IMG/VR virus record: IMGVR_UViG_3300038424_000251
Span: 248,001-312,000 of that record
Reading direction: 5' to 3' (one strand)
DNA length: 64,000 nucleotides
Numbering within the stretch: the stretch's first letter is position 1; every line of letters starts with the position of its first letter. Below, one piece after another: positions 1 to 18,888 of this stretch. The position numbers were made by a program, and so were the translations under genes. The notes below the pieces were generated by a model that was not told the origin of the DNA, did not search any database, and saw only the letters and a list, made by a program, of their open reading frames with translations.

Positions 1-75
1 AATTTGACAAGGGATTTTGGCCGTGATGAGTGAAGCTTGACATTTCTCAAAACAAATGTAAACTGATTTTACAAT

Positions 76-327
76 ATGAAAAAAGTTTACGTTGTAGCAT
101 GGGAAAGCAGGGACGGTAACGGGGTTGAATGGTATCATACACCCGAAGCTGCTGACAAAGCTTTTCACGAAGAAAAGAAAAATTGTGAAATTTTCCGCAG
201 TCGTAATTGGGCAGCTTATCGTTTTGATTTTCCAACAATAATGTCATGTCGCCGGATGATTTCCCATGATGTTGAATGTAACTATCTTAACCATTTGATG
301 TTACCGACAACGATTAAATACCCCTAA
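76..327 (+). CDS. early hypothetical protein
   Basis: ORF directly after promoter at 37. Confidence 0.75.
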   Translation: MKKVYVVAWESRDGNGVEWYHTPEAADKAFHEEKKNCEIFRSRNWAAYRFDFPTIMSCRRMISHDVECNYLNHLMLPTTIKYP

Positions 328-372
328 CAAAGCTTGACATTTGTTAAAACAATTGTATCATGTCATCACAAT

Positions 373-810
373 ATGACAAACACAATTGAATTAAACAAAA
401 ATTTCTTCTTCGGTGGTAACGCAACTTTCACTGTTGAATCAGACGTGACTCACGCGTGGCGAACGTATAAAATTCGCCGCTTCAAGAAAACCGAACGGTT
501 TCATAATCCTTCTTATGGTGTCTTTTTGTTGGCCGGTCCTGACAACGAAAATAGTTACGCGTATATCGGAATGGTTGACAAGGCCACCGGTTTCTTCCGC
601 CTGACATCCAAAAGCAAACGAAATGAAAATTCCTCCGATGTCATTATCTTTAAGTGGGTTATGCAAGGTGTATTTAACGGAATGACGTTAAAAAATGGAA
701 CGATTCACCATGAAGGGAAATGTGGCTGCTGTGGCCGCACTCTAACAGTCCCGGAATCAATTCGCCGTGGTATCGGACCAGAATGTTGGTCAAGGATTTA
801 CGGGGCTTGA
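373..810 (+). CDS. DUF6011-like Zn-finger protein
   Basis: C-terminal CGCCGRTLTVPESIRRGIGPEC; start moved to ATG 373 because the track's TTG start is the -35 box. Confidence 0.75.
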   Translation: MTNTIELNKNFFFGGNATFTVESDVTHAWRTYKIRRFKKTERFHNPSYGVFLLAGPDNENSYAYIGMVDKATGFFRLTSKSKRNENSSDVIIFKWVMQGVFNGMTLKNGTIHHEGKCGCCGRTLTVPESIRRGIGPECWSRIYGA

Positions 811-850
811 CAGAAACAATTTTTTTGGTAAATTGATATTAAATAAAATT

Positions 851-1249
851 ATGGGTAAAATCATTGTTACAAATCCGTTTAATCAAATTGACGAAATGTT
901 TAAGGATTATGTTCGCCCAGCGGAATATAATCAGCCGTTTGATTACTTAATGGCTGTTTGTGGTCGTATTGATTCACCCGGTCCACGGGATGAACGGTGG
1001 GAATACATTCGTGACGCAGGAATGGGATTGATTGAAAGAGTGTTGAAACGTCAACCGATTGGTGCAGGACCACATTATTTTGTTTTTCCTGACCGTTGGA
1101 TGGTACCCGGAGAAGCAATGGAGTTTGAATGTGCATTGCAGGAAAATCCCGACGCGAAAAAGTTCAAACGTGTTTATGTTGTGACGCATCAACCTTATCT
1201 TGTTAGTGGATGTTTACGAGAACAATGTCGAATTGTTCGGAAGGCTTGA
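851..1249 (+). CDS. early hypothetical protein
   Basis: ATG after promoter 807; stop overlaps the next -35. Confidence 0.7.
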   Translation: MGKIIVTNPFNQIDEMFKDYVRPAEYNQPFDYLMAVCGRIDSPGPRDERWEYIRDAGMGLIERVLKRQPIGAGPHYFVFPDRWMVPGEAMEFECALQENPDAKKFKRVYVVTHQPYLVSGCLREQCRIVRKA

Positions 1250-1284
1250 CATTTCTAAAAAGAAATATAAACTACCATCACAAT

Positions 1285-1593
1285 ATGATTAACGTCACTC
1301 TTGAAACGCCCGAATTCAAATCATGGATGCAGGGCATCATCGATAAAAACAGGGCCTACATGGCCGCAAGTTTTCCATCATTGGATGTGCCCACAATAAC
1401 GGCTACCGAAGGCAGTCGATATATTCGTGTCATGCGAGACAATTCCGCTCATGCTTTCATTGACCGCACCAACGGCGACGTGCTTAAACCGGCATCATGG
1501 AAAGCACCCGCCAAACACGCAAGAGGCAACATTTTTGATACTTTTAACGGATTGGGCAGCATGGGACCTTATGGACCGGCGTATCTTCGTTGA
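1285..1593 (+). CDS. conserved phage early protein (KPASWKAPAKHARGNI family)
   Basis: motif AFID..NGDVLKPASWKAPAKHARGNI seen in myophage hypotheticals. Confidence 0.75.
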   Translation: MINVTLETPEFKSWMQGIIDKNRAYMAASFPSLDVPTITATEGSRYIRVMRDNSAHAFIDRTNGDVLKPASWKAPAKHARGNIFDTFNGLGSMGPYGPAYLR

Positions 1594-1762
1594 AAGACGA
1601 AGGCTTGACATTTCTTAAAACAATGGTAAAATTTTCTTACAATAAAGTTTGAGGCCGACTGAAAAGCGCCAAGAGTAAGGGACCAGAGAGTGCGTTGATT
1701 ACTTTATCGTTAAAAAGTGACGCTTGACATTTTCTAAAACTAATATAAATTGTTACTACAAT

Positions 1763-1951
1763 ATGAAAAAACACAAATATTTTGTTCTCGTTGAGGAATC
1801 TGAGTCAATTCCTTCTCCCAAAATTTACGAAATTACAAGCAACGTTCCTCTTATAGAAGAACAAATTGAAAACGTCTTAGTTGATAACAACATTTCTTTT
1901 GTTGACAGCACTTTTCAAATTGTTGACGCCCCAATAAAAATTGAGGCTTGA
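1763..1951 (+). CDS. early hypothetical protein
   Basis: ATG 39 nt after TTG 1724. Confidence 0.7.
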   Translation: MKKHKYFVLVEESESIPSPKIYEITSNVPLIEEQIENVLVDNNISFVDSTFQIVDAPIKIEA

Positions 1952-1986
1952 CATTTCTTAAAAGTAATATAAACTACCGGCACGAT

Positions 1987-2244
1987 ATGACAAAAACATA
2001 TATTCACGAAAACGTTACCTACGGAGCCGCAGGGCGCCGCTGGAAATTCACCGCACCAAATTACGAATACGTTACGCCGCTTATGCCCGGTGGTCGGGCA
2101 ACGGCTGACAAAGTGGCACGCATCATCAATGGTGCTGTGAAACGGTCTGGCACGATGGATAATCTTGGCCGAGTCAATATGCACAAAGTATTTCACGATG
2201 CTGCCAAAGTTCAATCTCGCATCGTCAATCACCTTGACGATTGA
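1987..2244 (+). CDS. early hypothetical protein
   Basis: ATG 39 nt after TTG 1948. Confidence 0.7.
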   Translation: MTKTYIHENVTYGAAGRRWKFTAPNYEYVTPLMPGGRATADKVARIINGAVKRSGTMDNLGRVNMHKVFHDAAKVQSRIVNHLDD

Positions 2245-2281
2245 CGCTTGACAAATTCTAAAACAAGTATAAAATACCATT

Positions 2282-2482
2282 ATGATTTGCCACTACTGTC
2301 AAACTGAATACGACGAAAACGAACGTTGTTGCCCTATGTGTCACCGCACTCCGAGTGACAAAACCGGCGCCGGTAACGGATTGAAACCGAAACCTGTGAC
2401 TGTCAGAATTTCCGGTTTTCCTTTGAAAACCAATGTTTCGCCTAATCCCCCGAATCCGCAACATCGGTTCCACAAGGCTTGA
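2282..2482 (+). CDS. small Zn-ribbon protein
   Basis: CHYC...CPMC; follows promoter 2248. Confidence 0.65.
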   Translation: MICHYCQTEYDENERCCPMCHRTPSDKTGAGNGLKPKPVTVRISGFPLKTNVSPNPPNPQHRFHKA

Positions 2483-2547
2483 CAATTTTTAAAACAAATA
2501 TAAACTGTTTTTGTTGGTTGAAACAAACATAAACAAAAACACAAAAT

Positions 2548-3105
2548 ATGACAAACTTAGTCGCAGAAATTACAAAGGCTCTGACGGCCATTAAAGGAAA
2601 CCAGTTTGTTTCCATTACCTACTTGGCAAAGAAAAGTGGGGAATTGGCCCGTCACACTATCAATGTCGGGTTTTCCTACCACCGAGCGGTTGAAAAATCC
2701 GTTACTGAACTGGAAATTCTCACGGCGGAAAACTCCGCAACGTGGAATGAATTAACCAAACAGGCAGCCGCAAATGTCATGGCCAGCCTCAAAAAGACTC
2801 TGGAGGCACACGCCCGCGGGGAACAAAACGAAGATTACACGAAAAGGGGCCAATACATTCCGATTGGTAACGGCGTGAACTTGAACACCGCCGACAATAC
2901 AATTCAACTTTTCGGATTGTCTCACGCAAAAACGGTATTGGTTGAAGGGATTTACCCGACAGTGAACAGCCGGCCGCTGACGATTGAACAAAACAAAATC
3001 CGCAATATGCTAACCGTCAGCAAGTTCCGCGAGTTCGCTCTTGACTCGTCACAAATCGCACAAGTCAAAGTGAACGGCGACACTTTGGAATTGGTAAGTC
3101 GGTAA
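2548..3105 (+). CDS. early hypothetical protein
   Basis: 185-aa ORF with A-rich leader, followed by a strong hairpin. Confidence 0.8.
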   Translation: MTNLVAEITKALTAIKGNQFVSITYLAKKSGELARHTINVGFSYHRAVEKSVTELEILTAENSATWNELTKQAAANVMASLKKTLEAHARGEQNEDYTKRGQYIPIGNGVNLNTADNTIQLFGLSHAKTVLVEGIYPTVNSRPLTIEQNKIRNMLTVSKFREFALDSSQIAQVKVNGDTLELVSR

Positions 3106-3121
3106 GTTGGTCATATTGTGG

Positions 3122-3153
3122 GAGTTAGGTGGGCTTCGGCTCACCTGACTCTT
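3122..3153 (+). terminator. 13-bp UUCG hairpin (terminator/stabiliser)
   Basis: gagttaggtgggc-ttcg-gctcacctgactc; weak U tract. Confidence 0.55.
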
Positions 3154-3328
3154 GCGGTTGTTTTCAGATAACGTTAAAGGAATCACCGCAGACTCCAGTC
3201 CCCTACTCTCCGGCATCTTTCAGCCACATCGTTTATTATGAGAAAATAATAACATAACTTTAAAAATTGTCAAGCGTTGACAGTGAGGCTTGACAAATTG
3301 AATTTTTCATATAAACTACAATCACAAT

Positions 3329-3484
3329 ATGAAAATACTTTACAATTACTGGCGACAATCATTTAAACATCCATCCCTTACAAGGGAACAACTCCGAAAC
3401 ATTGCGAGGATTGCTAATGTTTCAAGGGGCCGGAACACCAAGGACACAATCGCAAATCTCAAAGTAGCCAGTATCATTGTGTGA
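3329..3484 (+). CDS. small early hypothetical protein (not in ORF track)
   Basis: ATG 39 nt after TTG 3290; MKILYNYWRQ... Confidence 0.6.
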   Translation: MKILYNYWRQSFKHPSLTREQLRNIARIANVSRGRNTKDTIANLKVASIIV

Positions 3485-3526
3485 CGCTTGACATTTGCTA
3501 AAAGAAATGTAAACTTCCATCACAAT

Positions 3527-3841
3527 ATGAAAAGAAAATCTGTTATTTGTAAATCTGGTTTGATGGGATGGCAAGGGAAACTACAAGACCAGTATAAAGA
3601 CTTTACTGAATTTGAATCCTTTTGTCGCATTTACAATAATCACATACAGCTTGGTTACAAGACGCCGGCTTCGGCTTGGCGTGCCAATCCAACCATTCAA
3701 GGTTCAACAAATCCGTCTGACTATCGGAAAGTCGAAAAGACATATCACTGTCAAAACGAAGAGTGTGGTGAACAAGTTTCAAAAACAACGTGGTATAAAT
3801 ATCAGGGATTATGTCCGGAGTGTTTCAGTTTCACTGACTGA
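3527..3841 (+). CDS. early protein with C-terminal Zn finger
   Basis: CQNEEC...CPEC; ATG 39 nt after TTG 3488. Confidence 0.7.
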   Translation: MKRKSVICKSGLMGWQGKLQDQYKDFTEFESFCRIYNNHIQLGYKTPASAWRANPTIQGSTNPSDYRKVEKTYHCQNEECGEQVSKTTWYKYQGLCPECFSFTD

Positions 3842-3962
3842 CACGCTTGACATTTCTTGAATGTTTGATAAATTCAACTCACAATGACAATACGATTTTA
3901 CATTGAACGAAGTACCAACATGGTTCGCATGTCAGTGCGGTTCTACAAACGAAAGTAATGTT

Positions 3963-4205
3963 ATGGAAAACTACACTTTTATTGCTTTGGACCAAGAACC
4001 TGTAAAATGTAACTCCTTCAAGGAAGCTTTTACCGCTATGTTCAATTGGGTTCAAAAACACTTAAACGGTGAAGGTTTATCATATCAAGTGTTGGAAACT
4101 GCTATTTGGATTGAAATAAACGGTCGACCACTTTACTTTTACGATGCCCGTGATAGAGCCATTGACGAGAATATTCTCAAAGATGGAAAACTTATAGAAA
4201 CTTGA
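3963..4205 (+). CDS. early hypothetical protein
   Basis: ATG 3963; stop overlaps -35 at 4202. Confidence 0.6.
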   Translation: MENYTFIALDQEPVKCNSFKEAFTAMFNWVQKHLNGEGLSYQVLETAIWIEINGRPLYFYDARDRAIDENILKDGKLIET

Positions 4206-4237
4206 CAACCCTACAAAAGTCAAGTAAATTTGGTCCT

Positions 4238-4456
4238 ATGAAGGTAAAAATCATAGGGCCTAATCAATCGGAATTGGTAATGGGCAATAAAACTGTTCTT
4301 TTTTCTTACTCAATTCCAGTTGCTGCAAAGGTTGGTAACAAATTTTATAGAACTAACAAATTTCACAGCAAAACTATCAATCATCATATCAATCAATGGC
4401 TAAAAGGTTGCGCTGAACACCGTTCTCAATCATGGTTCAATCAGTTAGTGGAATAA
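4238..4456 (+). CDS. conserved small phage protein
   Basis: VLFSY..PVAA...SKTI.HHIN.WL motif. Confidence 0.7.
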   Translation: MKVKIIGPNQSELVMGNKTVLFSYSIPVAAKVGNKFYRTNKFHSKTINHHINQWLKGCAEHRSQSWFNQLVE

Positions 4457-4504
4457 AACAGTGACGCTTGACAAAGTTCTATTGTGGTATAAATTACAAA
4501 TACT

Positions 4505-4717
4505 ATGAATCCTTTTTTAATTGGAGCTACCATTCTTGTTTGGTGTTTATTCTTATTCGCCTATCTGTTGTCGGCGATAACAAATGGAAAAAATAATTAC
4601 ATTTGTGACGCATTCATTTTTCTTGTCATTGGTATTTTTTTGACAATTGCTTGTGGTGCTTCGTGGCAACATTTGCATGACACGCCACAACTACCTGCTA
4701 TTGAACAACATAAGTAA
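4505..4717 (+). CDS. small membrane protein (2 TM)
   Basis: two hydrophobic segments; follows promoter 4468. Confidence 0.7.
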   Translation: MNPFLIGATILVWCLFLFAYLLSAITNGKNNYICDAFIFLVIGIFLTIACGASWQHLHDTPQLPAIEQHK

Positions 4718-4763
4718 CGAGGCTTGACGGATTTTTAATGTGGTGTAAACTTTACGCCACAAT

Positions 4764-5102
4764 ATGAAAGATTTTACTACTGCCATTGACGAATTACTCC
4801 AATTTCTCACTGAAAATCCCACACTTTCACACCAACGGCGTGCTCTCGGGACCAATGGAAAATTGGCCGATGTTGAAACGGTGGATAACTGGATTGGAGA
4901 AAAACTTTCCGAAGCTAGTTCAACTTTACTTGACCAAATTCATCAAGAAATTTTTGAGTCTTTACCACAAGAAAGAAAAGACGCAATCATATCTGAAACC
5001 AAAGAATCAATCCCCGTGGATACAAGTGGCAAACCTGAATTGACGCCTGCTTATCTCCGTTCAATAGGTCGCTTAGACTTACTTGAATGGGGAACAGATT
5101 AA
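4764..5102 (+). CDS. early hypothetical protein
   Basis: follows promoter 4724. Confidence 0.75.
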   Translation: MKDFTTAIDELLQFLTENPTLSHQRRALGTNGKLADVETVDNWIGEKLSEASSTLLDQIHQEIFESLPQERKDAIISETKESIPVDTSGKPELTPAYLRSIGRLDLLEWGTD

Positions 5103-5142
5103 GAACGCTTGACATTTCTTAAAATAATGGTAGGTTAATACC

Positions 5143-5376
5143 ATGAAAAAAATCCGATATATTTATTGGGTATCACTTAGCGAGATACTTTGCCGTGAGT
5201 CGGAAAATCCTAAACTATTCCAGTACTTCAGTGGTTCAGCGTGGTATAATTCAATCGCTAACTATCGAATACATCCTGATAGTTTCACCCGTATTTCCAG
5301 AAAAGAAGCAATGAAAAGATACACTGATGCTTTCTCTGCTATAGTTCGTTCACAACGTCATTTAGAGAACGCTTGA
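5143..5376 (+). CDS. early hypothetical protein
   Basis: follows promoter 5109; stop lies in the next -35. Confidence 0.7.
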   Translation: MKKIRYIYWVSLSEILCRESENPKLFQYFSGSAWYNSIANYRIHPDSFTRISRKEAMKRYTDAFSAIVRSQRHLENA

Positions 5377-5406
5377 CTTTCTATAAACATTTGGTAAGTT
5401 AAAGAT

Positions 5407-5694
5407 ATGAAATTTTTCACTATTACCAACGTAGATTTTGCTCAAATTCTTCGAGATTTCCGCAACTACGGAACACCGCATAGCAATCTCCTTCATTCCT
5501 TTGGAAATTTTCATTTGGCCATATCCAATGACCGTGAAGTGTATCATTTGTTTTTCCATTGTGCTGAATTTTATTTCATCATGGAATACATTTACAAAAT
5601 GGAACTGGTACAAGTCGAAGGTGATGTTGAACAATTCAGTTTACAGATGAGCAGACATTTCCCATCGGTTCACATAACACCGTCGAAGGCTTGA
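5407..5694 (+). CDS. early hypothetical protein
   Basis: follows promoter 5373. Confidence 0.7.
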   Translation: MKFFTITNVDFAQILRDFRNYGTPHSNLLHSFGNFHLAISNDREVYHLFFHCAEFYFIMEYIYKMELVQVEGDVEQFSLQMSRHFPSVHITPSKA

Positions 5695-5724
5695 CCTTCA
5701 ATAAAACTTTGGTAAATTGATTAT

Positions 5725-6078
5725 ATGATTATTCCACTCACTTTGAATGAAGAGAAATTCAGTGGAAGGCTATGGTCAAAAGGATTTCTAGCATTTTGTG
5801 ATTCCGTTCTCTCCAAGCTCGGCGCAAGGGGTAGAAGTTGCCGGTTGATAGTTCGCCTCAAAAATCCAAAAAATAAAGGGTTCACCAAAGTTCGTTTACA
5901 GCGTTCCACATCTGGAGATTATTGGAAGTGGTTCATTGACTCCGAACCATTCGCGTCACTTTTTCCATGTCATTCCTGTATTCATTATTTTCATGGCAGA
6001 GTCGTGGACAAACTTATCAATGAAACTTGTCCCAGCGCTATTGAAAATACGGTATGGGTACGAATTGAGAACGCTTGA
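5725..6078 (+). CDS. early hypothetical protein
   Basis: follows promoter 5691. Confidence 0.7.
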   Translation: MIIPLTLNEEKFSGRLWSKGFLAFCDSVLSKLGARGRSCRLIVRLKNPKNKGFTKVRLQRSTSGDYWKWFIDSEPFASLFPCHSCIHYFHGRVVDKLINETCPSAIENTVWVRIENA

Positions 6079-6108
6079 CATTTCTTAAATAAACGGTAAA
6101 CTACTTTT

Positions 6109-6267
6109 ATGAACAGATTATTTCCTAACAACGATGATTTTGATAAGTCATTCAACCGCGCCAGAAACTTCATCATCGCCATTTGGATAATCGGTGTCAT
6201 CGGTTCACTGCCTCTTGTTGGTGCTGGTATCTATGTTGCTATTCACTTTCTTAGTAAAGTGTGGTAA
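6109..6267 (+). CDS. small membrane protein (not in ORF track)
   Basis: MNRLFPNNDD...IIAIWIIGVIGSLPLVGAGIYVAIHFLSKVW after promoter 6075. Confidence 0.6.
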   Translation: MNRLFPNNDDFDKSFNRARNFIIAIWIIGVIGSLPLVGAGIYVAIHFLSKVW

Positions 6268-6272
6268 ACCTT

Positions 6273-6593
6273 ATGGCAAGAATAGTTCTGACAGCAAAAT
6301 CCCGTCAAACACTCAAAGAACTTGGATTTGAAGAAGTTCATTCAGGTTCAGCAATGGGTGGATGGTTTGGTGACGTTTACATACTTGTTTGGGAAAACGG
6401 AACATCATACGTTACTATTCGTGGCGGTAAGCAGGTTAAATTTGAGCTAACCGAATATTGGATTCCTTCGGTAAAGTATATGGCTTATCACGCCTTACGT
6501 CAAGAAATTGGCAGAATGCGTGAAGAAATTGACCGTGTTGAAACATTGTCAGACAGGTTTTTCAAGAAAACCATATTAAACTTAAAGGCTTGA
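6273..6593 (+). CDS. early hypothetical protein
   Basis: ATG 6273; stop lies in -35 at 6590. Confidence 0.7.
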   Translation: MARIVLTAKSRQTLKELGFEEVHSGSAMGGWFGDVYILVWENGTSYVTIRGGKQVKFELTEYWIPSVKYMAYHALRQEIGRMREEIDRVETLSDRFFKKTILNLKA

Positions 6594-6650
6594 CTTTCTA
6601 TAAATATTCGATAAACTGTCTTTGTTAGTTAAAACAAACAATAACACAAT

Positions 6651-6839
6651 ATGGCAAAGACATACACCAGCAAACTTACAGCCGGTAAAGATACCATAAC
6701 GACTACCGTTCGCAAAACCAAGACGTTCATTTATATCCAAAATGAATTGAACGGAAGACGGTTAGGAGAACAAGGTATCCGATTGGAAAACTTTCGTAAA
6801 GAACCTTGGAGATTTGGTTCACCTTCTTCCACCAAGTAA
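6651..6839 (+). CDS. small basic hypothetical protein
   Basis: A-rich leader like that of gene 2548. Confidence 0.65.
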   Translation: MAKTYTSKLTAGKDTITTTVRKTKTFIYIQNELNGRRLGEQGIRLENFRKEPWRFGSPSSTK

Positions 6840-6848
6840 TAACACCAT

Positions 6849-6993
6849 AAGCCCTAGCCTACGCGGGCTGGGCTTATTAGGTTGACTTAACCACCCCATT
6901 ACCCCACCCTAGCAGGTGTGGGGTGCCCTTCTGATCATGGGGATCAAAAGGGGGCTGCTACCCCGCGCATGTTAGTCTGCGACGGGAACTCCA
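6849..6993. other. GC-rich hairpin cluster at a compositional boundary
   Basis: ataagccctagcct..gggctgggcttat and runs of C and G; no ORF. Confidence 0.55.
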
Positions 6994-7148
6994 TTTTTTC
7001 TTAAGAAATAAAATACGTATTTACATGCGCTTTATATTCTCATGTGCTTTACACACAACAAAACTCTTAACACAATTTTAGCTCTTATAATGTCGGAAAG
7101 CACAAAAGAACTTGACAATTTAAGCATTTTCCTGTATCATATAAAAAT

Positions 7149-12387: not shown

Positions 12388-12791
12388 GGGCGTGTAATGG
12401 TATCGATTTATCATAACAGTCATACAGAGCATGTAGAGGATTGGTCATCTGTGGCCTCTTAAAAAACGAAGACTAAACTAAATGCTAATCTAAATCGATT
12501 GGTAAATGCTGACTTTGCTTTTGAGGTTAATACCTTTGAGGAAGTCGCTGTAGCGGCCTAGTTTCCGCTCCGTCATGTTGAGTGATTCTCACTAATTCAA
12601 TAATGGCGTAAAACCGTGAGAAAACTGCTTGTGGTTAAAATTACAGGACTGGTTAGATTGGGCAGTTCTCAATCTAGGTTTGATAATTTTCTCAAATTTT
12701 GATATTAAACCGAAGTTTAAAGTTGATAAACATGTAGTGCTGGATGGGTGTAATGGTAAAAACACGGGTTCAATTCCCGTCACGTCCACCA
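12388..12791 (+). ncRNA. ssrA: tmRNA
   Basis: GGGCGTG/CACGTCC-A-CCA acceptor with G3:U70, T-arm acggg-ttcaatt-cccgt, tag ORF 12484-12561 ANLNRLVNADFAFEVNTFEEVAVAA; promoter TTGACA ~12344. Confidence 0.93.
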
Positions 12792-15846: not shown

Positions 15847-17043
15847 ATGAATAATATAGAATTAATGGTAAAATCCCTCAAAGGTTTGTGGGTTGGTGAT
15901 TGTATTGGAAATGTTGGACAGTTTTATTACGCTCAAGACATATTAAAAGCGTTGGATGAAGGAATTGCTAAATTTGGGATAGATAACATAGACCCTATGG
16001 GAAAATCATTCCAATATTCCGATGACACGGAAGAGGCAATCGTTTTGGTAAATCACTTGTTTAACAACAAGAAAATTTTACAAGATAAGTTAGCGATGGA
16101 ATGGGCAACTAGATATTATACCCGTGACCCTGATGGTGAAATTTATGGTTACGGATTGATGACTAGGAAAGTGTTAAAAGATATTTATGAGGGTAAACCT
16201 TGGAGAGAAGCAAATTTAACATTTCAGAGAGGCGAAAGTCCATCAAACATTGATGTGTTAATAGGTGATATTGCGCATGGTAAATCTGTCAAAGATGCTT
16301 TATCGGAATTAAGAAAAGATGGTAGTCAAAAATTTCTTCCACAAAAAGTTGGTTCGTGTGGTAATGGGTCTGCTATGAGAATTCCTCCATTGGGTGCGTA
16401 TTTTTATCTTTCTCCAATTGAAGAAGTTGTTAAACAAGCAACGTTATCAGCAGAACCAACTCATTGTCATCCGGAAGGGATTGCTGGTGCTATTGCTATT
16501 GCATCATTAGCAAAGTGTATTTCGTTGTCTGAATGGGTATATAAATCGGAAAAGGTGTTGAATACAAATTATGTCACAGATATGGATACCAAGAAAATCT
16601 ATGATTACATCTTGGAATTTATTCCTGATAGCCAAGTAAAAAAAGGTATTCTTAAAGCAAAGGAACTTCCATTGGACATACCTTTGATGAAACTGATTGA
16701 AATTTTAGGAAATGGAACATATGTTACTTGTCAAGATACAGTTCCATTATGTGTATTTTTAACAATACAGGCATTATCCTTATATCCATTAGATGAAATG
16801 TATGAAAAGGTTTTAATTGATACTTGTAAATGTTTTGGTGATGTTGATACAAATTGTGCTATTGTTGGTGGTATGATTGGAATTATCAGTTCTCCACCTG
16901 AAAAATGGATAAGATATTGTCAACCAATGGAAGGAGTAATGGGTGACCCGTTGCCTGAAATTACAACACAAAGAAAAAGAACAGAATACAATGTTAATAA
17001 AGATGCTATAAAAGACATACTGAACAATATAAAAGAAAAATAA
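15847..17043 (+). CDS. ADP-ribosylglycohydrolase
   Basis: GDCIG, YSDDTE, SCGNGSAMR, GDVDTNCAIVG. Confidence 0.9.
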   Translation: MNNIELMVKSLKGLWVGDCIGNVGQFYYAQDILKALDEGIAKFGIDNIDPMGKSFQYSDDTEEAIVLVNHLFNNKKILQDKLAMEWATRYYTRDPDGEIYGYGLMTRKVLKDIYEGKPWREANLTFQRGESPSNIDVLIGDIAHGKSVKDALSELRKDGSQKFLPQKVGSCGNGSAMRIPPLGAYFYLSPIEEVVKQATLSAEPTHCHPEGIAGAIAIASLAKCISLSEWVYKSEKVLNTNYVTDMDTKKIYDYILEFIPDSQVKKGILKAKELPLDIPLMKLIEILGNGTYVTCQDTVPLCVFLTIQALSLYPLDEMYEKVLIDTCKCFGDVDTNCAIVGGMIGIISSPPEKWIRYCQPMEGVMGDPLPEITTQRKRTEYNVNKDAIKDILNNIKEK

Positions 17044-18813: not shown

Positions 18814-18888
18814 GCTTCATTAGTTCAATGGCAAGAACAGGCGCCCCTAAACCGCCTTATAAGGGTTCAAGTCCCTTATGAAGCGCCA
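18814..18888 (+). tRNA. tRNA-like with CUA anticodon (amber suppressor-like)
   Basis: GCTTCAT/ATGAAGC-G-CCA; loop ccCTAaa; C31:C39 mismatch. Confidence 0.65.

What the first reader, a model, noticed from the sequence alone, without database searches (positions are those of the whole stretch)
35..6620. Promoter-per-gene early cassette array where the -35 box is the previous gene's stop codon
Seen: ~20 copies of GCTTGACA-N16-TAnnnT with short or absent leaders. GCT-TGA ends genes at 810, 1249, 1951, 2482, 5376, 5694, 6078 and 6593 (also 24503), so these proteins all end in Ala. A TTG-to-ATG distance of 39 nt recurs. Known: repeated early promoters define shuffled modules in T4-like and SPO1-like host-takeover regions. 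Inference: recombination at the promoter motif captures and reorders genes and supplies a stop; the array may also titrate host RNA polymerase.
Basis: partly seen in the sequence, partly recalled or inferred. Interest (0 to 1): 0.62.

Follow-up and report, generated by a model that had tools for sequence, protein, structure and literature searches.

The report
Promoter-bounded early gene cassettes in jumbo phage
A 365-kb uncultured peat phage gives almost every small early gene its own near-identical strong promoter, packed so tightly that the promoter's TTGACA box often supplies the previous gene's stop codon, and these promoter-plus-gene units are what relatives gain, lose and move.

Summary
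Window 35-6620 holds 20 plus-strand copies and one minus-strand copy of one promoter-like motif, (A/G)A(C/G)-GCTTGAC-N17-TAnnnT with TGn before the -10 box. This is the densest part of a set of about 95 copies, confined to 120-280 kb of a 365-kb T4-type phage from peat and wetland metagenomes.

- **Stop overlap:** The TGA inside TTGACA ends the upstream ORF at 8 GCT-TGA sites and one ACT-TGA site in the array, and at 28 of 83 sites genome-wide. It is the commonest stop position.
- **Start codons:** They sit at fixed distances from the G of GCTTGAC (36, 39 or 41 nt). The predicted transcription start (pyrimidine at +35, A at +36) is on the AUG or 3-5 nt before it. The genome has no Shine-Dalgarno signal.
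- **Relatives:** Gene content and order differ. One cassette lies inverted on the other arm in a relative. Two indels between 99%-identical relatives have their crossovers inside promoter copies (30-bp and 15-bp shared stretches).

The nearest known system is the T4-type PeSL (promoter-early stem-loop) cassette. It differs in having no stem-loop, stop/-35 overlap and leaderless starts.

Promoter activity, timing, transcription starts and circular intermediates are inferred, because no RNA data exist. RNA polymerase titration is untested.

The parts
35..327 (+). Cassette 1: promoter 35-64, ATG at 76 (41 nt from the G of GCTTGAC), ORF 76-327 (83 aa, TAA stop 4 nt before the next promoter).
   Evidence: no Pfam or PHROG family
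332..810 (+). Cassette 2: promoter 332-361, ORF 373-810 (145 aa, DUF6011/phrog_20259). It ends GCT TGA inside the -35 box of the next promoter.
   Evidence: The G002 orthologue (79% aa) ends TAG at -4 instead.
805..1249 (+). Cassette 3: promoter 805-834, ORF 851-1249 (132 aa). It ends GCT TGA in the next -35 box. In G002 this cassette lies inverted on the other divergent arm.
1244..1593 (+). Cassette 4: promoter 1244-1273, ORF 1285-1593 (102 aa, DUF7717/phrog_5014), TGA stop 10 nt before the next promoter.
1603..1720 (+). Cassette 5, non-coding: promoter 1603-1632, followed by an ~83-nt conserved RNA-like element (1637-1719) and no ORF.
1722..1951 (+). Cassette 6: promoter 1722-1751, ORF 1763-1951 (62 aa). 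It ends GCT TGA in the next -35 box.
1946..2244 (+). Cassette 7: promoter 1946-1975, ORF 1987-2244 (85 aa), TGA stop at -4 of the next promoter. G002 homology resumes exactly at 1945.
2246..2482 (+). Cassette 8: promoter 2246-2275, ATG at +36 (predicted leaderless), ORF 2282-2482 (66 aa, CxxC pairs). It ends GCT TGA in the next -35 box.
2477..3158 (+). Cassette 9: promoter 2477-2506, 41-nt hairpin leader, ORF 2548-3105 (185 aa), then a 20-bp-stem terminator-like hairpin at 3115-3158.
3162..3275 (-). Minus-strand promoter (3275-3246) driving a second copy of the non-coding element (3241-3162). It converges on the 3115-3158 hairpin.
3288..3484 (+). Cassette 10: promoter 3288-3317, ORF 3329-3484 (51 aa), TGA at -4 of the next promoter.
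3486..3841 (+). Cassette 11: promoter 3486-3515, ORF 3527-3841 (104 aa).
3845..4205 (+). Cassette 12: promoter 3845-3874, a short ORF from 3885, then ORF 3963-4205 (80 aa). It ends ACT TGA inside the variant promoter ACTTGACA.
4200..4456 (+). Cassette 13: variant promoter 4200-4230 (ACTTGACA, hexamer spacer one nt longer), ORF 4238-4456 (72 aa, phrog_5643).
4466..4717 (+). Cassette 14: promoter 4466-4495, ORF 4505-4717 (70 aa, hydrophobic).
4722..5102 (+). Cassette 15: promoter 4722-4751 (GCTTGACG), ORF 4764-5102 (112 aa).
5107..5376 (+). Cassette 16: promoter 5107-5136, ATG at +36, ORF 5143-5376 (77 aa). It ends GCT TGA in the next -35 box.
5371..5694 (+). Cassette 17: promoter 5371-5400 (GCTTGACT), ATG at +36, ORF 5407-5694 (95 aa). 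It ends GCT TGA in the next -35 box.
5689..6078 (+). Cassette 18: promoter 5689-5718 (GCTTGACC), ATG at +36, ORF 5725-6078 (117 aa). It ends GCT TGA in the next -35 box.
6073..6593 (+). Cassette 19: promoter 6073-6102, ATG at +36, ORF 6109-6267 (52 aa). ORF 6273-6593 (106 aa) follows without its own promoter and ends GCT TGA in the next -35 box.
6588..6877 (+). Cassette 20: promoter 6588-6617 (GCTTGACT), hairpin leader like that of cassette 9, ORF 6651-6839 (62 aa), then a GC-rich hairpin at 6847-6877 that closes the array.

Best explanation
**What it is.** The stretch is the densest part of the early, hyperplastic region of an uncultured 365-kb T4-type jumbo phage. It is a row of small, mostly orphan genes, each with its own copy of one strong sigma-70-type promoter. 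The promoter reads RAS-GCTTGAC, a 16-nt hexamer spacer, then TGn-TAnnnT.

**How the units are packed.**
- The predicted start of transcription lies on the A of the ATG (spacing 36) or 3-5 nt before it (spacings 39 and 41). The messages would therefore be leaderless or nearly so.
- This fits a genome with no Shine-Dalgarno signal.
- No intergenic DNA is left, so each promoter is written over the last codons of the gene before it. Where the frame allows, the TGA of TTGACA serves as that gene's stop, leaving a C-terminal Ala from GCT.
- No terminators stand between genes. Transcription from each promoter should therefore also read through downstream genes, as far as the hairpins at 3115-3158 and 6847-6877.

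**How the units move.** Each promoter shares 12-30 bp exactly with some other copy. These copies serve as short-homology crossover sites for the phage's own recombination system: a UvsX/RecA-like gene is present and no integrase is found. Promoter-plus-gene units are thereby deleted, inserted, replaced and moved between the two divergent arms. This is the mechanism proposed for PeSL cassettes of T4-type coliphages.

**Shown here:** the motif, its spacing, the stop overlap and its frame bias, the fixed ATG distance, the mosaic gene content, and crossovers inside promoter copies in relatives.

**Inferred:** promoter activity with host polymerase, early timing, the start sites, leaderless translation, and the recombination pathway with any circular intermediate.
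For: **Motif.**
- GC precedes 95 of 133 TTGAC-N17-TAnnnT sites. The spacing is rigid: 95 copies at N17 against 8 at N18.
- The class is confined to 120-280 kb, away from the capsid gene at 354-356 kb.
- No sigma-70 region-2 gene is found in the phage.

**Start spacing.**
- Of the 69 promoters (out of 95) with a start codon at +30 to +50, 30 have it at +36, 14 at +39 and 10 at +41. 65 of the 69 starts are ATG.
- The base at +35 is a pyrimidine in 75 of 95 copies, and the base at +36 is A in 63 of 95.
- SD-like 4-mers occur upstream of 12% of starts, against 6% at random positions.

**Stop overlap.** G000 has 28 of 83, G002 14 of 50, G008 6 of 10 and G009 3 of 8. The frame bias gives p=0.007 over all ends and p=1.5e-5 among tight ends.

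**Orphan genes.** 16 of the 20 array ORFs have no Pfam or PHROG family.

**Shuffling.**
- G002 (63-85% nt identity) is colinear overall but mosaic in the arrays.
- Window 851-1249 sits inverted on the other arm of G002.
- Window 851-1951 is absent between the orthologues of its two flanking genes. Homology resumes exactly at the -35 box.
- G007 and G009 are 99.4-99.8% identical. A 211-bp promoter-plus-ORF cassette is flanked by identical 30-bp promoter repeats in one and reduced to a single copy in the other.
- A 1.5-kb block of 5 ORFs and 3 promoters has its crossover within the shared GATAGGGCTTGACTT.

**Substrate and machinery.** Exact shared runs of 12-30 bp exist between promoter copies. 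A RecA/UvsX-like gene is present and no tyrosine integrase is found.

**Precedent.** PMC2839356 and PMC4122927 describe PeSL cassettes.
Against: - No RNA data exist for this phage. Promoter function, timing and start sites therefore rest on consensus alone, and the host is unknown.
- Promoters fill all the intergenic space. Any surviving gene-level indel would have ends near a promoter, so the G000/G002 edge enrichment does not by itself show recombination at the motif.
- The clean repeat-bounded events are in more distant relatives (G007/G009), not in the G000 lineage. The two other records of this phage (G001, G006) appear to be the same phage; the 60 kb of G001 compared is 99.9% identical with no indel.
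- A 30-bp repeat could in principle cause an assembly collapse.
- The overlap state is labile. At one orthologue pair the same TGA exists without a promoter, which is compatible with gain or loss in place.
- Most genes of the genome lack their own promoter and are presumably translated internally without SD. Leaderless starts therefore do not force one promoter per gene.
- Contigs laid from four metagenomes gave no reliable recombinant joints. Several loose ends were paralogous promoter copies.
Confidence: 0.6

Rival explanations
1. Compaction and change in place only. The promoters are kept alike by selection for polymerase binding. Genes drift up against them, and a lost native stop is harmlessly replaced by the in-frame TGA of the -35 box. 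Recombination at the motif plays no special part, and cassette edges coincide with promoters only because indels that cut genes are removed by selection.
For: - In the orthologue pair at G000 204396 and G002 58054 the stop TGA is at the same place, with a promoter in one (GCT TGA CAA) and none in the other (AGT TGA TAA).
- The overlap state differs in 10 of about 14 orthologue pairs where either member overlaps.
- The frame bias is moderate over all ends (39 of 83, p=0.007).
- There is no dyad or covariation signal in the spacer that would point to a recombinase site.
Against: - Two recent indels in 99%-identical genomes carry the direct-repeat footprint of crossover within promoter copies.
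- One cassette has moved to the opposite arm in promoter-consistent orientation.
- Identical 30-bp promoters accompany the duplicated non-coding cassettes on both arms.
- Almost no ORF ends at the TAA in the spacer (+10). Random run-on would use it as often as the TGA.
Confidence: 0.2
2. The class is not a plain host promoter. The invariant GC and the RAS bases before TTGAC, together with the conserved T-tract/A-tract spacer, are read by a phage-made factor, such as an activator or appropriator as in T4 middle mode, or a shut-off repressor. The class would then be delayed-early or middle rather than immediate-early.
For: - The motif is more constrained than a sigma-70 consensus needs. GC is invariant, and the spacer is conserved across phages whose proteins are only 30-45% identical.
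- Other sigma-70-like sites without GC exist in the tRNA region.
- The class also precedes large genes from 133 to 236 kb.
Against: - TTGAC at the normal -35 place plus an extended -10 box is already a near-consensus host promoter.
- GCTT lies about 6 bp upstream of where a MotA box would sit. This placement rests on my own knowledge of T4 middle promoters.
- There is no dyad covariation in the spacer.
- No such factor was identified.
Confidence: 0.12
3. The array acts chiefly as a sink that titrates host RNA polymerase away from host promoters. The small ORFs would then matter less than the promoters themselves.
For: About 95 near-consensus promoters, 20 of them in 6.6 kb. Two of the array promoters drive no ORF.
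Against: - Many of the ORFs are conserved as proteins in G002 at 50-87% aa identity.
- The two promoters without an ORF drive a conserved RNA with a covarying hairpin.
- Nothing here measures polymerase occupancy.
Confidence: 0.05

Closest known systems
PeSL (promoter-early stem-loop) cassettes of T4-type phages RB49/phi1, PST/T4 and nt-1/KVP40 (Arbiol et al. 2010, PMC2839356; Comeau et al. 2014, PMC4122927)
   Same: - Repeated strong sigma-70-like early promoters concentrated in hyperplastic regions of a T4-type genome.
- Each promoter flanks a small orphan gene.
- Insertions, deletions and replacements between relatives have crossovers in the repeated motif.
- No dedicated integrase is present, so the phage's own homologous recombination is assumed.
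   Different: - There is no stem-loop or terminator in the unit. The plus strand has only one hairpin with a T tail (3115-3158) and one GC-rich hairpin (6847-6877) in 6.9 kb.
- There is no AT-rich spacer holding the upstream stop. Instead the -35 box itself carries the stop in a third of cases.
- The starts are leaderless or have 3-5-nt leaders without SD.
- The motif has an invariant GC before TTGAC.
- Some cassettes carry a small RNA instead of an ORF.
- Circles are untested.
T4 early promoters and the early transcription programme (review PMC2988021)
   Same: - Many copies of a promoter that is stronger and more constrained than the host consensus.
- The copies are placed before early genes of a T4-type phage.
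- The phage has no polymerase of its own.
   Different: - The sequence of the extended motif differs.
- The density (one per ~330 bp) and the overlap with coding ends are far tighter.
- The T4 late motif TATAAATA is not enriched in this genome, so the later programme may differ.
Integron gene cassettes
   Same: Small, mostly promoter-dependent single-gene units are exchanged at a short repeated boundary site, giving arrays of unrelated genes.
   Different: - No integrase is found.
- The boundary is a promoter, not an attC site.
- Each unit brings its own promoter rather than relying on one Pc.

Membership tests
PeSL cassette (T4-type phages) | Repeated sigma-70-like early promoter consensus concentrated in variable regions of a T4-type genome. 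| tested here: met
   - 93-95 copies, 20 of them in 6.6 kb.
- T4-type gp23 capsid gene.
PeSL cassette (T4-type phages) | A stable stem-loop (terminator or attenuator) adjoining the promoter within each unit. | tested here: not met
   - The terminator scan finds one plus-strand hairpin with a T tail inside the array (3115-3158), and folding finds a GC-rich hairpin at its end (6847-6877).
- Only 6-11 nt separate the -10 box from the ATG.
- The DNA upstream of -35 is coding.
PeSL cassette (T4-type phages) | Flanks small genes without known homologues. | tested here: met
   16 of 20 ORFs have no Pfam or PHROG family. The other 4 hit only families of unknown function.
PeSL cassette (T4-type phages) | Indels and replacements between close relatives with crossover points inside the motif. 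| tested here: met
   - G007 vs G009: crossovers within 30-bp and 15-bp promoter homologies.
- G000 vs G002: block edges at 0 to -2 of GCTTGAC and one translocated cassette.
PeSL cassette (T4-type phages) | Formation of small circular DNAs by exchange between neighbouring motifs. | not testable with these tools
   Only assembled contigs of DNA runs were available, and they gave no reliable back-joints.
Sigma-70-type promoter read by host holoenzyme | -35 TTGACA-like and -10 TAnnnT hexamers at 16-18-nt spacing, with a purine start about 7 nt after the -10 box. | tested here: met
   - TTGAC is invariant, the hexamer spacer is 16 nt, and TGn precedes TAnnnT.
- Pyrimidine at +35 and A at +36.
Sigma-70-type promoter read by host holoenzyme | Transcription demonstrably starts there. 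| not testable with these tools
   No RNA run holds this phage.
Leaderless mRNA | 5' end of the transcript within a few nt of an AUG start, with no SD. | tested here: inconclusive
   - The geometry fits: ATG at +36, +39 or +41 in 54 of 69 promoter-proximal starts, 65 of 69 starts are ATG, and there is no SD.
- The 5' ends themselves are not mapped.
Integron | Tyrosine-recombinase integrase with attI/attC sites. | tested here: not met
   No Phage_integrase family match in the genome. The boundary repeats are promoters.

The most novel reading that the evidence does not exclude
The promoter copy is a self-sufficient plug-in boundary. It gives the gene behind it a transcription start that is also its translation start, with no leader and no ribosome-binding site. 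It also gives whatever gene lands in front of it a ready Ala-stop ending.

Any ORF can then be dropped between two copies by short-homology recombination and be expressed at once. This would be an integrase-free, integron-like gene-capture system, conserved across a clade of peat jumbo phages. The system also carries a new, multi-copy, promoter-coupled small RNA family.
Probability: 0.3. Interest if true: 0.65.

Novelty: new variant of a known kind. Interest (0 to 1): 0.5.

Why it matters
- **Generality of the mechanism.** If the starts are confirmed, promoter-mediated cassette shuffling, so far documented in T4-type phages of enterobacteria, Yersinia and Vibrio, would also operate in a distant clade of uncultured soil jumbo phages. 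It would do so in a stripped-down form.
- **The stripped-down form.** The unit has no terminator and no leader, and the promoter doubles as the end of the preceding gene.
- **A model for leaderless expression.** This would be a natural case of leaderless, Shine-Dalgarno-free early expression in a phage. The one jumbo phage in the dRNA-seq paper I read, phiKZ, showed no leaderless transcripts (PMC8244752).
- **A practical marker.** The motif marks early genes, and therefore candidate host-takeover and anti-defence genes, in this clade.
- **The attached RNA.** The small RNA family is a new object for study.

Tried and rejected
- **DNA similarity.** A search of the array against 50,697 phage records found no match.
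- **Capsid relatives.** The nearest capsid relatives with known or partly known context are Flavobacterium phage immuto, Microcystis phage Mel-JY01 and the huge uncultured phage LR756508. None carries the promoter class; their counts equal the reversed-pattern control. They give no host clue.
- **Host search.** No psbA gene was found. Relatives cannot be drawn for a virus record. The ADP-ribosylglycohydrolase gene has no close bacterial relative. The host stays unknown.
- **Phage-made sigma factor.** No region-2 match was found. There was only a sub-threshold region-4 hit.
- **Operator-like dyad in the spacer.** No covariation between symmetric positions was seen.
- **T4 late motif TATAAATA.** It is not enriched.
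- **G001 and G006.** G001 is 99.9% identical to G000 over the 60 kb compared, and G006 carries the same promoter series, so neither is informative.
- **Metagenome contigs.** I laid contigs of four runs on window 1-6000. Contigs break or diverge at promoter edges. Several loose ends are paralogous promoter copies of the same genome, and the two listed joints rest on only 21-26 letters. I draw no conclusion from them.
- **Non-coding element.** It has no Rfam family. Its folding energy is no better than shuffles. RNAalifold gave no consensus on the MAFFT alignment. Only the 5' hairpin is supported, after realignment with a covariance model.

Full report
**Where the window lies.** The window is bases 248,001-312,000 of a single 365,299-bp IMG/VR virus record. 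The record has 33% G+C and is rated complete.
- It carries a T4-type gp23 capsid gene at 354-356 kb.
- The nearest capsid proteins, all about 62% identical, belong to an uncultured 484-kb phage, Flavobacterium phage immuto and Microcystis phage Mel-JY01.
- The window also holds 43 tRNA genes and a tmRNA.
- The same DNA occurs in 24 peat and wetland metagenome runs. None of these is RNA.

**The observation.**
- GCTTGACA occurs 23 times in the window against 1.3 expected. Sixteen of the copies lie in the first 6.1 kb.
- Counting the variants GCTTGACG, GCTTGACT, GCTTGACC and ACTTGACA, window 35-6620 carries 20 plus-strand copies and one minus-strand copy.
- A weight matrix built from them finds 93 copies in the genome and none in shuffles. 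Nearly all lie between 120 and 280 kb.
- The consensus is (A/G)A(C/G)-GCTTGAC-(A/T)TTTyTwTAAAA-nTnTG(A/G)-TAnAnT. This is a TTGACA-type box, a 16-nt hexamer spacer and a TGn-extended -10 box.
- GC precedes TTGAC-N17-TAnnnT in 95 of 133 cases, and the spacing is rigid, with 95 copies at N17 and 8 at N18.

**The stop codon.**
ACT-TGA at 4205 is a ninth in the array.
- Genome-wide, 28 of 83 upstream ORFs stop at the TGA of TTGACA. The next commonest position is -4, with 10-11 cases, where the stop sits one base before the motif. Only one ORF uses the TAA that the spacer offers at +10.
- The frame that puts the TGA in phase is over-represented: 39 of 83 over all ends (p=0.007) and 33 of 53 among ends within 12 nt (p=1.5e-5).
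- The same habit is seen in relatives: G002 14 of 50, G008 6 of 10 and G009 3 of 8.
- The C-terminal Ala simply follows from GCT. The residues before it are unremarkable.

**The start codon.**
- Sixty-nine of the 95 promoters have a start codon opening an ORF of at least 40 aa within +30 to +50 of the G of GCTTGAC. Thirty of these are at +36, 14 at +39 and 10 at +41, and 65 are ATG.
- The -10 box ends at +29. The base at +35 is a pyrimidine in 75 of 95 copies, and the base at +36 is A in 63 of 95. This is the usual signature of a start site 7 nt after the -10 box.
- The predicted transcripts therefore begin on the AUG or 3-5 nt before it. In the 41 class the predicted 5' end reads ACAAUAUG.
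- Only 12% of long ORFs in the genome have an SD-like 4-mer upstream, against 6% at random positions. The unknown host evidently does not rely on SD.
- In phiKZ, the jumbo phage whose dRNA-seq map I read, no leaderless transcript was seen (PMC8244752).
- Most genes of this phage have no promoter of their own, for example 6273-6593. Leaderless starts therefore do not by themselves force one promoter per gene.

**What the units carry.**
- Sixteen of the 20 ORFs match no Pfam or PHROG family. The other four hit only families of unknown function: DUF6011, DUF7717, phrog_5643 and a weak DUF7248 match.
- There are no paralogues among them.
- Two promoters, 1603 on the plus strand and 3275 on the minus strand, drive no ORF. 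Each is followed by an ~80-nt conserved element, described below.
- Terminator-like hairpins stand only at 3115-3158 and 6847-6877. The array would therefore be read as nested, overlapping transcripts.

**Relatives.**
- G001 is the same phage, 99.9% identical over the 60 kb compared; G006 carries the same promoter series.
- G002 is a 63-kb fragment, 63-85% identical where alignable. It is colinear with G000 266.8 kb back to 200.8 kb and carries 63 copies of the promoter.
- Within the arrays the gene content is mosaic.
- Window 851-1951, which is four cassettes, is missing between the orthologues of ORF 373-810 and ORF 1987-2244. Homology stops at 789 and resumes at 1945, one base before the G of GCTTGACA at 1946.
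- The gene at 851-1249 is present in G002 at 87% aa identity, but inverted on the other divergent arm. There it occupies a slot between the orthologues of two G000 minus-arm genes, where G000 has other ORFs.
- About 18 of 46 homology-block edges fall within 8 nt of a GCTTGAC start, many at 0 to -2. Because the promoters fill the intergenic space, this alone cannot separate mechanism from selection.

**The strongest evidence for recombination at the motif.** It comes from G007 and G009. These are more distant members of the clade (30-65% aa identity to G000) and are 99.4-99.8% identical to each other.
- In the first event, a 211-bp unit (promoter plus a 36-aa ORF) in G007 is flanked by two identical 30-bp promoter copies. 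G009 has one copy with the outer flanks.
- In the second event, G009 has an extra 1.5-kb block of 5 ORFs and 3 promoters. Its crossover lies within the 15 bp GATAGGGCTTGACTT shared by two otherwise different promoters.
- Each G000 promoter shares a 12-30-bp exact run with another copy.
- The genome encodes a RecA/UvsX-like protein and no tyrosine integrase.

**Evidence that not everything is recombination.**
- Among G000/G002 orthologues the overlap is kept in 3-4 pairs and differs in 10.
- For the 781-aa gene at G000 204396, the stop TGA is at the same place in both phages. The context is a promoter in one (TAT GCT TGA CAA) and not in the other (AAT AGT TGA TAA).
- Gain or loss in place, or insertion exactly at the stop, are both possible readings.

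**Comparison with what is known.** PeSLs are composite promoter and stem-loop motifs in the hyperplastic regions of T4-type coliphages and vibriophages.
- They flank orphan genes, mark the crossover points of indels, and can form mini-circles (PMC2839356 and PMC4122927).
- The present array shares the promoter, the orphan genes, the crossovers and the lack of an integrase.
- It lacks the stem-loop, which is a defining part of a PeSL. It adds stop/-35 overlap, leaderless spacing and the invariant GC.
- I therefore file it as something that works like a PeSL system but is a distinct variant, not a member in the strict sense.

**What remains open.**
- Promoter activity, timing and transcription start sites are untested.
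- The host is unknown.
- Whether the GC and the conserved spacer are read by a phage factor is unknown.
- Whether circles form is unknown.
- RNA polymerase titration is untested.

**Seen in passing.**
- *Small RNA-like family.* A covariance model finds 19 copies in five phage records, five of them in G000. Each copy sits directly behind an early promoter.
  - Its 5' hairpin shows double changes at 5 of 6 pairs. The covariation score is 0.24 against 0.13 in shuffles, and 0 of 500 shuffles reach it. The alignment was fitted to the model, so this leans in favour of the structure.
  - Its 3' 45 nt are nearly invariant.
  - It matches no Rfam family. Its core is absent from 185,579 prokaryote species genomes.
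- *Conserved structured block.* A GC-rich multi-hairpin block at 6846-7000 is more conserved than the genes around it.

Noticed in passing
window 1637-1719 (+) and 3162-3241 (-); also L087 2313-2392, 12377-12456 and 18677-18778 (all -): A multi-copy small non-coding RNA-like family of ~80-100 nt. Each copy sits directly behind an early promoter and ends at the next promoter or at a hairpin.
- There are 19 copies in five phage records.
- The 5' hairpin shows compensatory changes.
- The 3' block GAGTAGGGGACC...CCTTTAtCGTTA is nearly invariant.
- It matches no Rfam family and is absent from the prokaryote genome collection.
- Its function is unknown.
   Followed up: partly
window 6846-7000: A GC-rich, multi-hairpin non-coding block just after the last array gene.
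- It is 84% identical to G002, more than the neighbouring genes.
- Folding z-scores are -3.0 on the plus strand and -3.8 on the minus strand.
- It ends in a T run.
- It may be a compound terminator or a structured RNA.
   Followed up: partly
window 2507-2547 and 6618-6650: The two array genes with long leaders (ORFs 2548-3105 and 6651-6839, each the last before a hairpin) share a similar leader. It has an inverted repeat of the TTTGTT...AACAAA kind. The G002 orthologue of the first gene has a leader of the same length.
   Followed up: no
window 12388-47096: 43 tRNA genes and a tmRNA (12388-12791). The set includes a tRNA with anticodon CUA (18814-18888), which would read TAG. TAG ends only 15 of 307 long ORFs in the genome. 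I assumed no change of genetic code.
   Followed up: no
whole genome (G000): No Shine-Dalgarno signal before genes (12% against 6% at random). The upstream region is A-rich, and T stands at -1 in 65% of starts. This points to a host that does not use SD, but the host could not be identified.
   Followed up: partly
G000 238.6-246.8 kb (L087 10600-18800), minus strand: A second array of the same promoters runs leftwards, so the early region is divergent. The two arrays interleave at 244.9-246.8 kb. Back-to-back promoter pairs lie at 244946/244955 and 246816/246828.
   Followed up: partly
window 15847-17043: A gene for an ADP-ribosylglycohydrolase family protein (Pfam E=5e-36), 84% identical in G002. 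No close relative exists in the prokaryote genome collection.
   Followed up: partly
window 1-6000 in runs X21-X24: The phage is present in at least 24 peat and wetland metagenome runs from 24 studies.
- In run X21 one contig is identical over 2611-3232 and then continues with 187 nt found in neither G000 nor G002.
- Another contig in the same run carries the reference form.
- This may be a structural variant next to the minus-strand promoter.
   Followed up: partly
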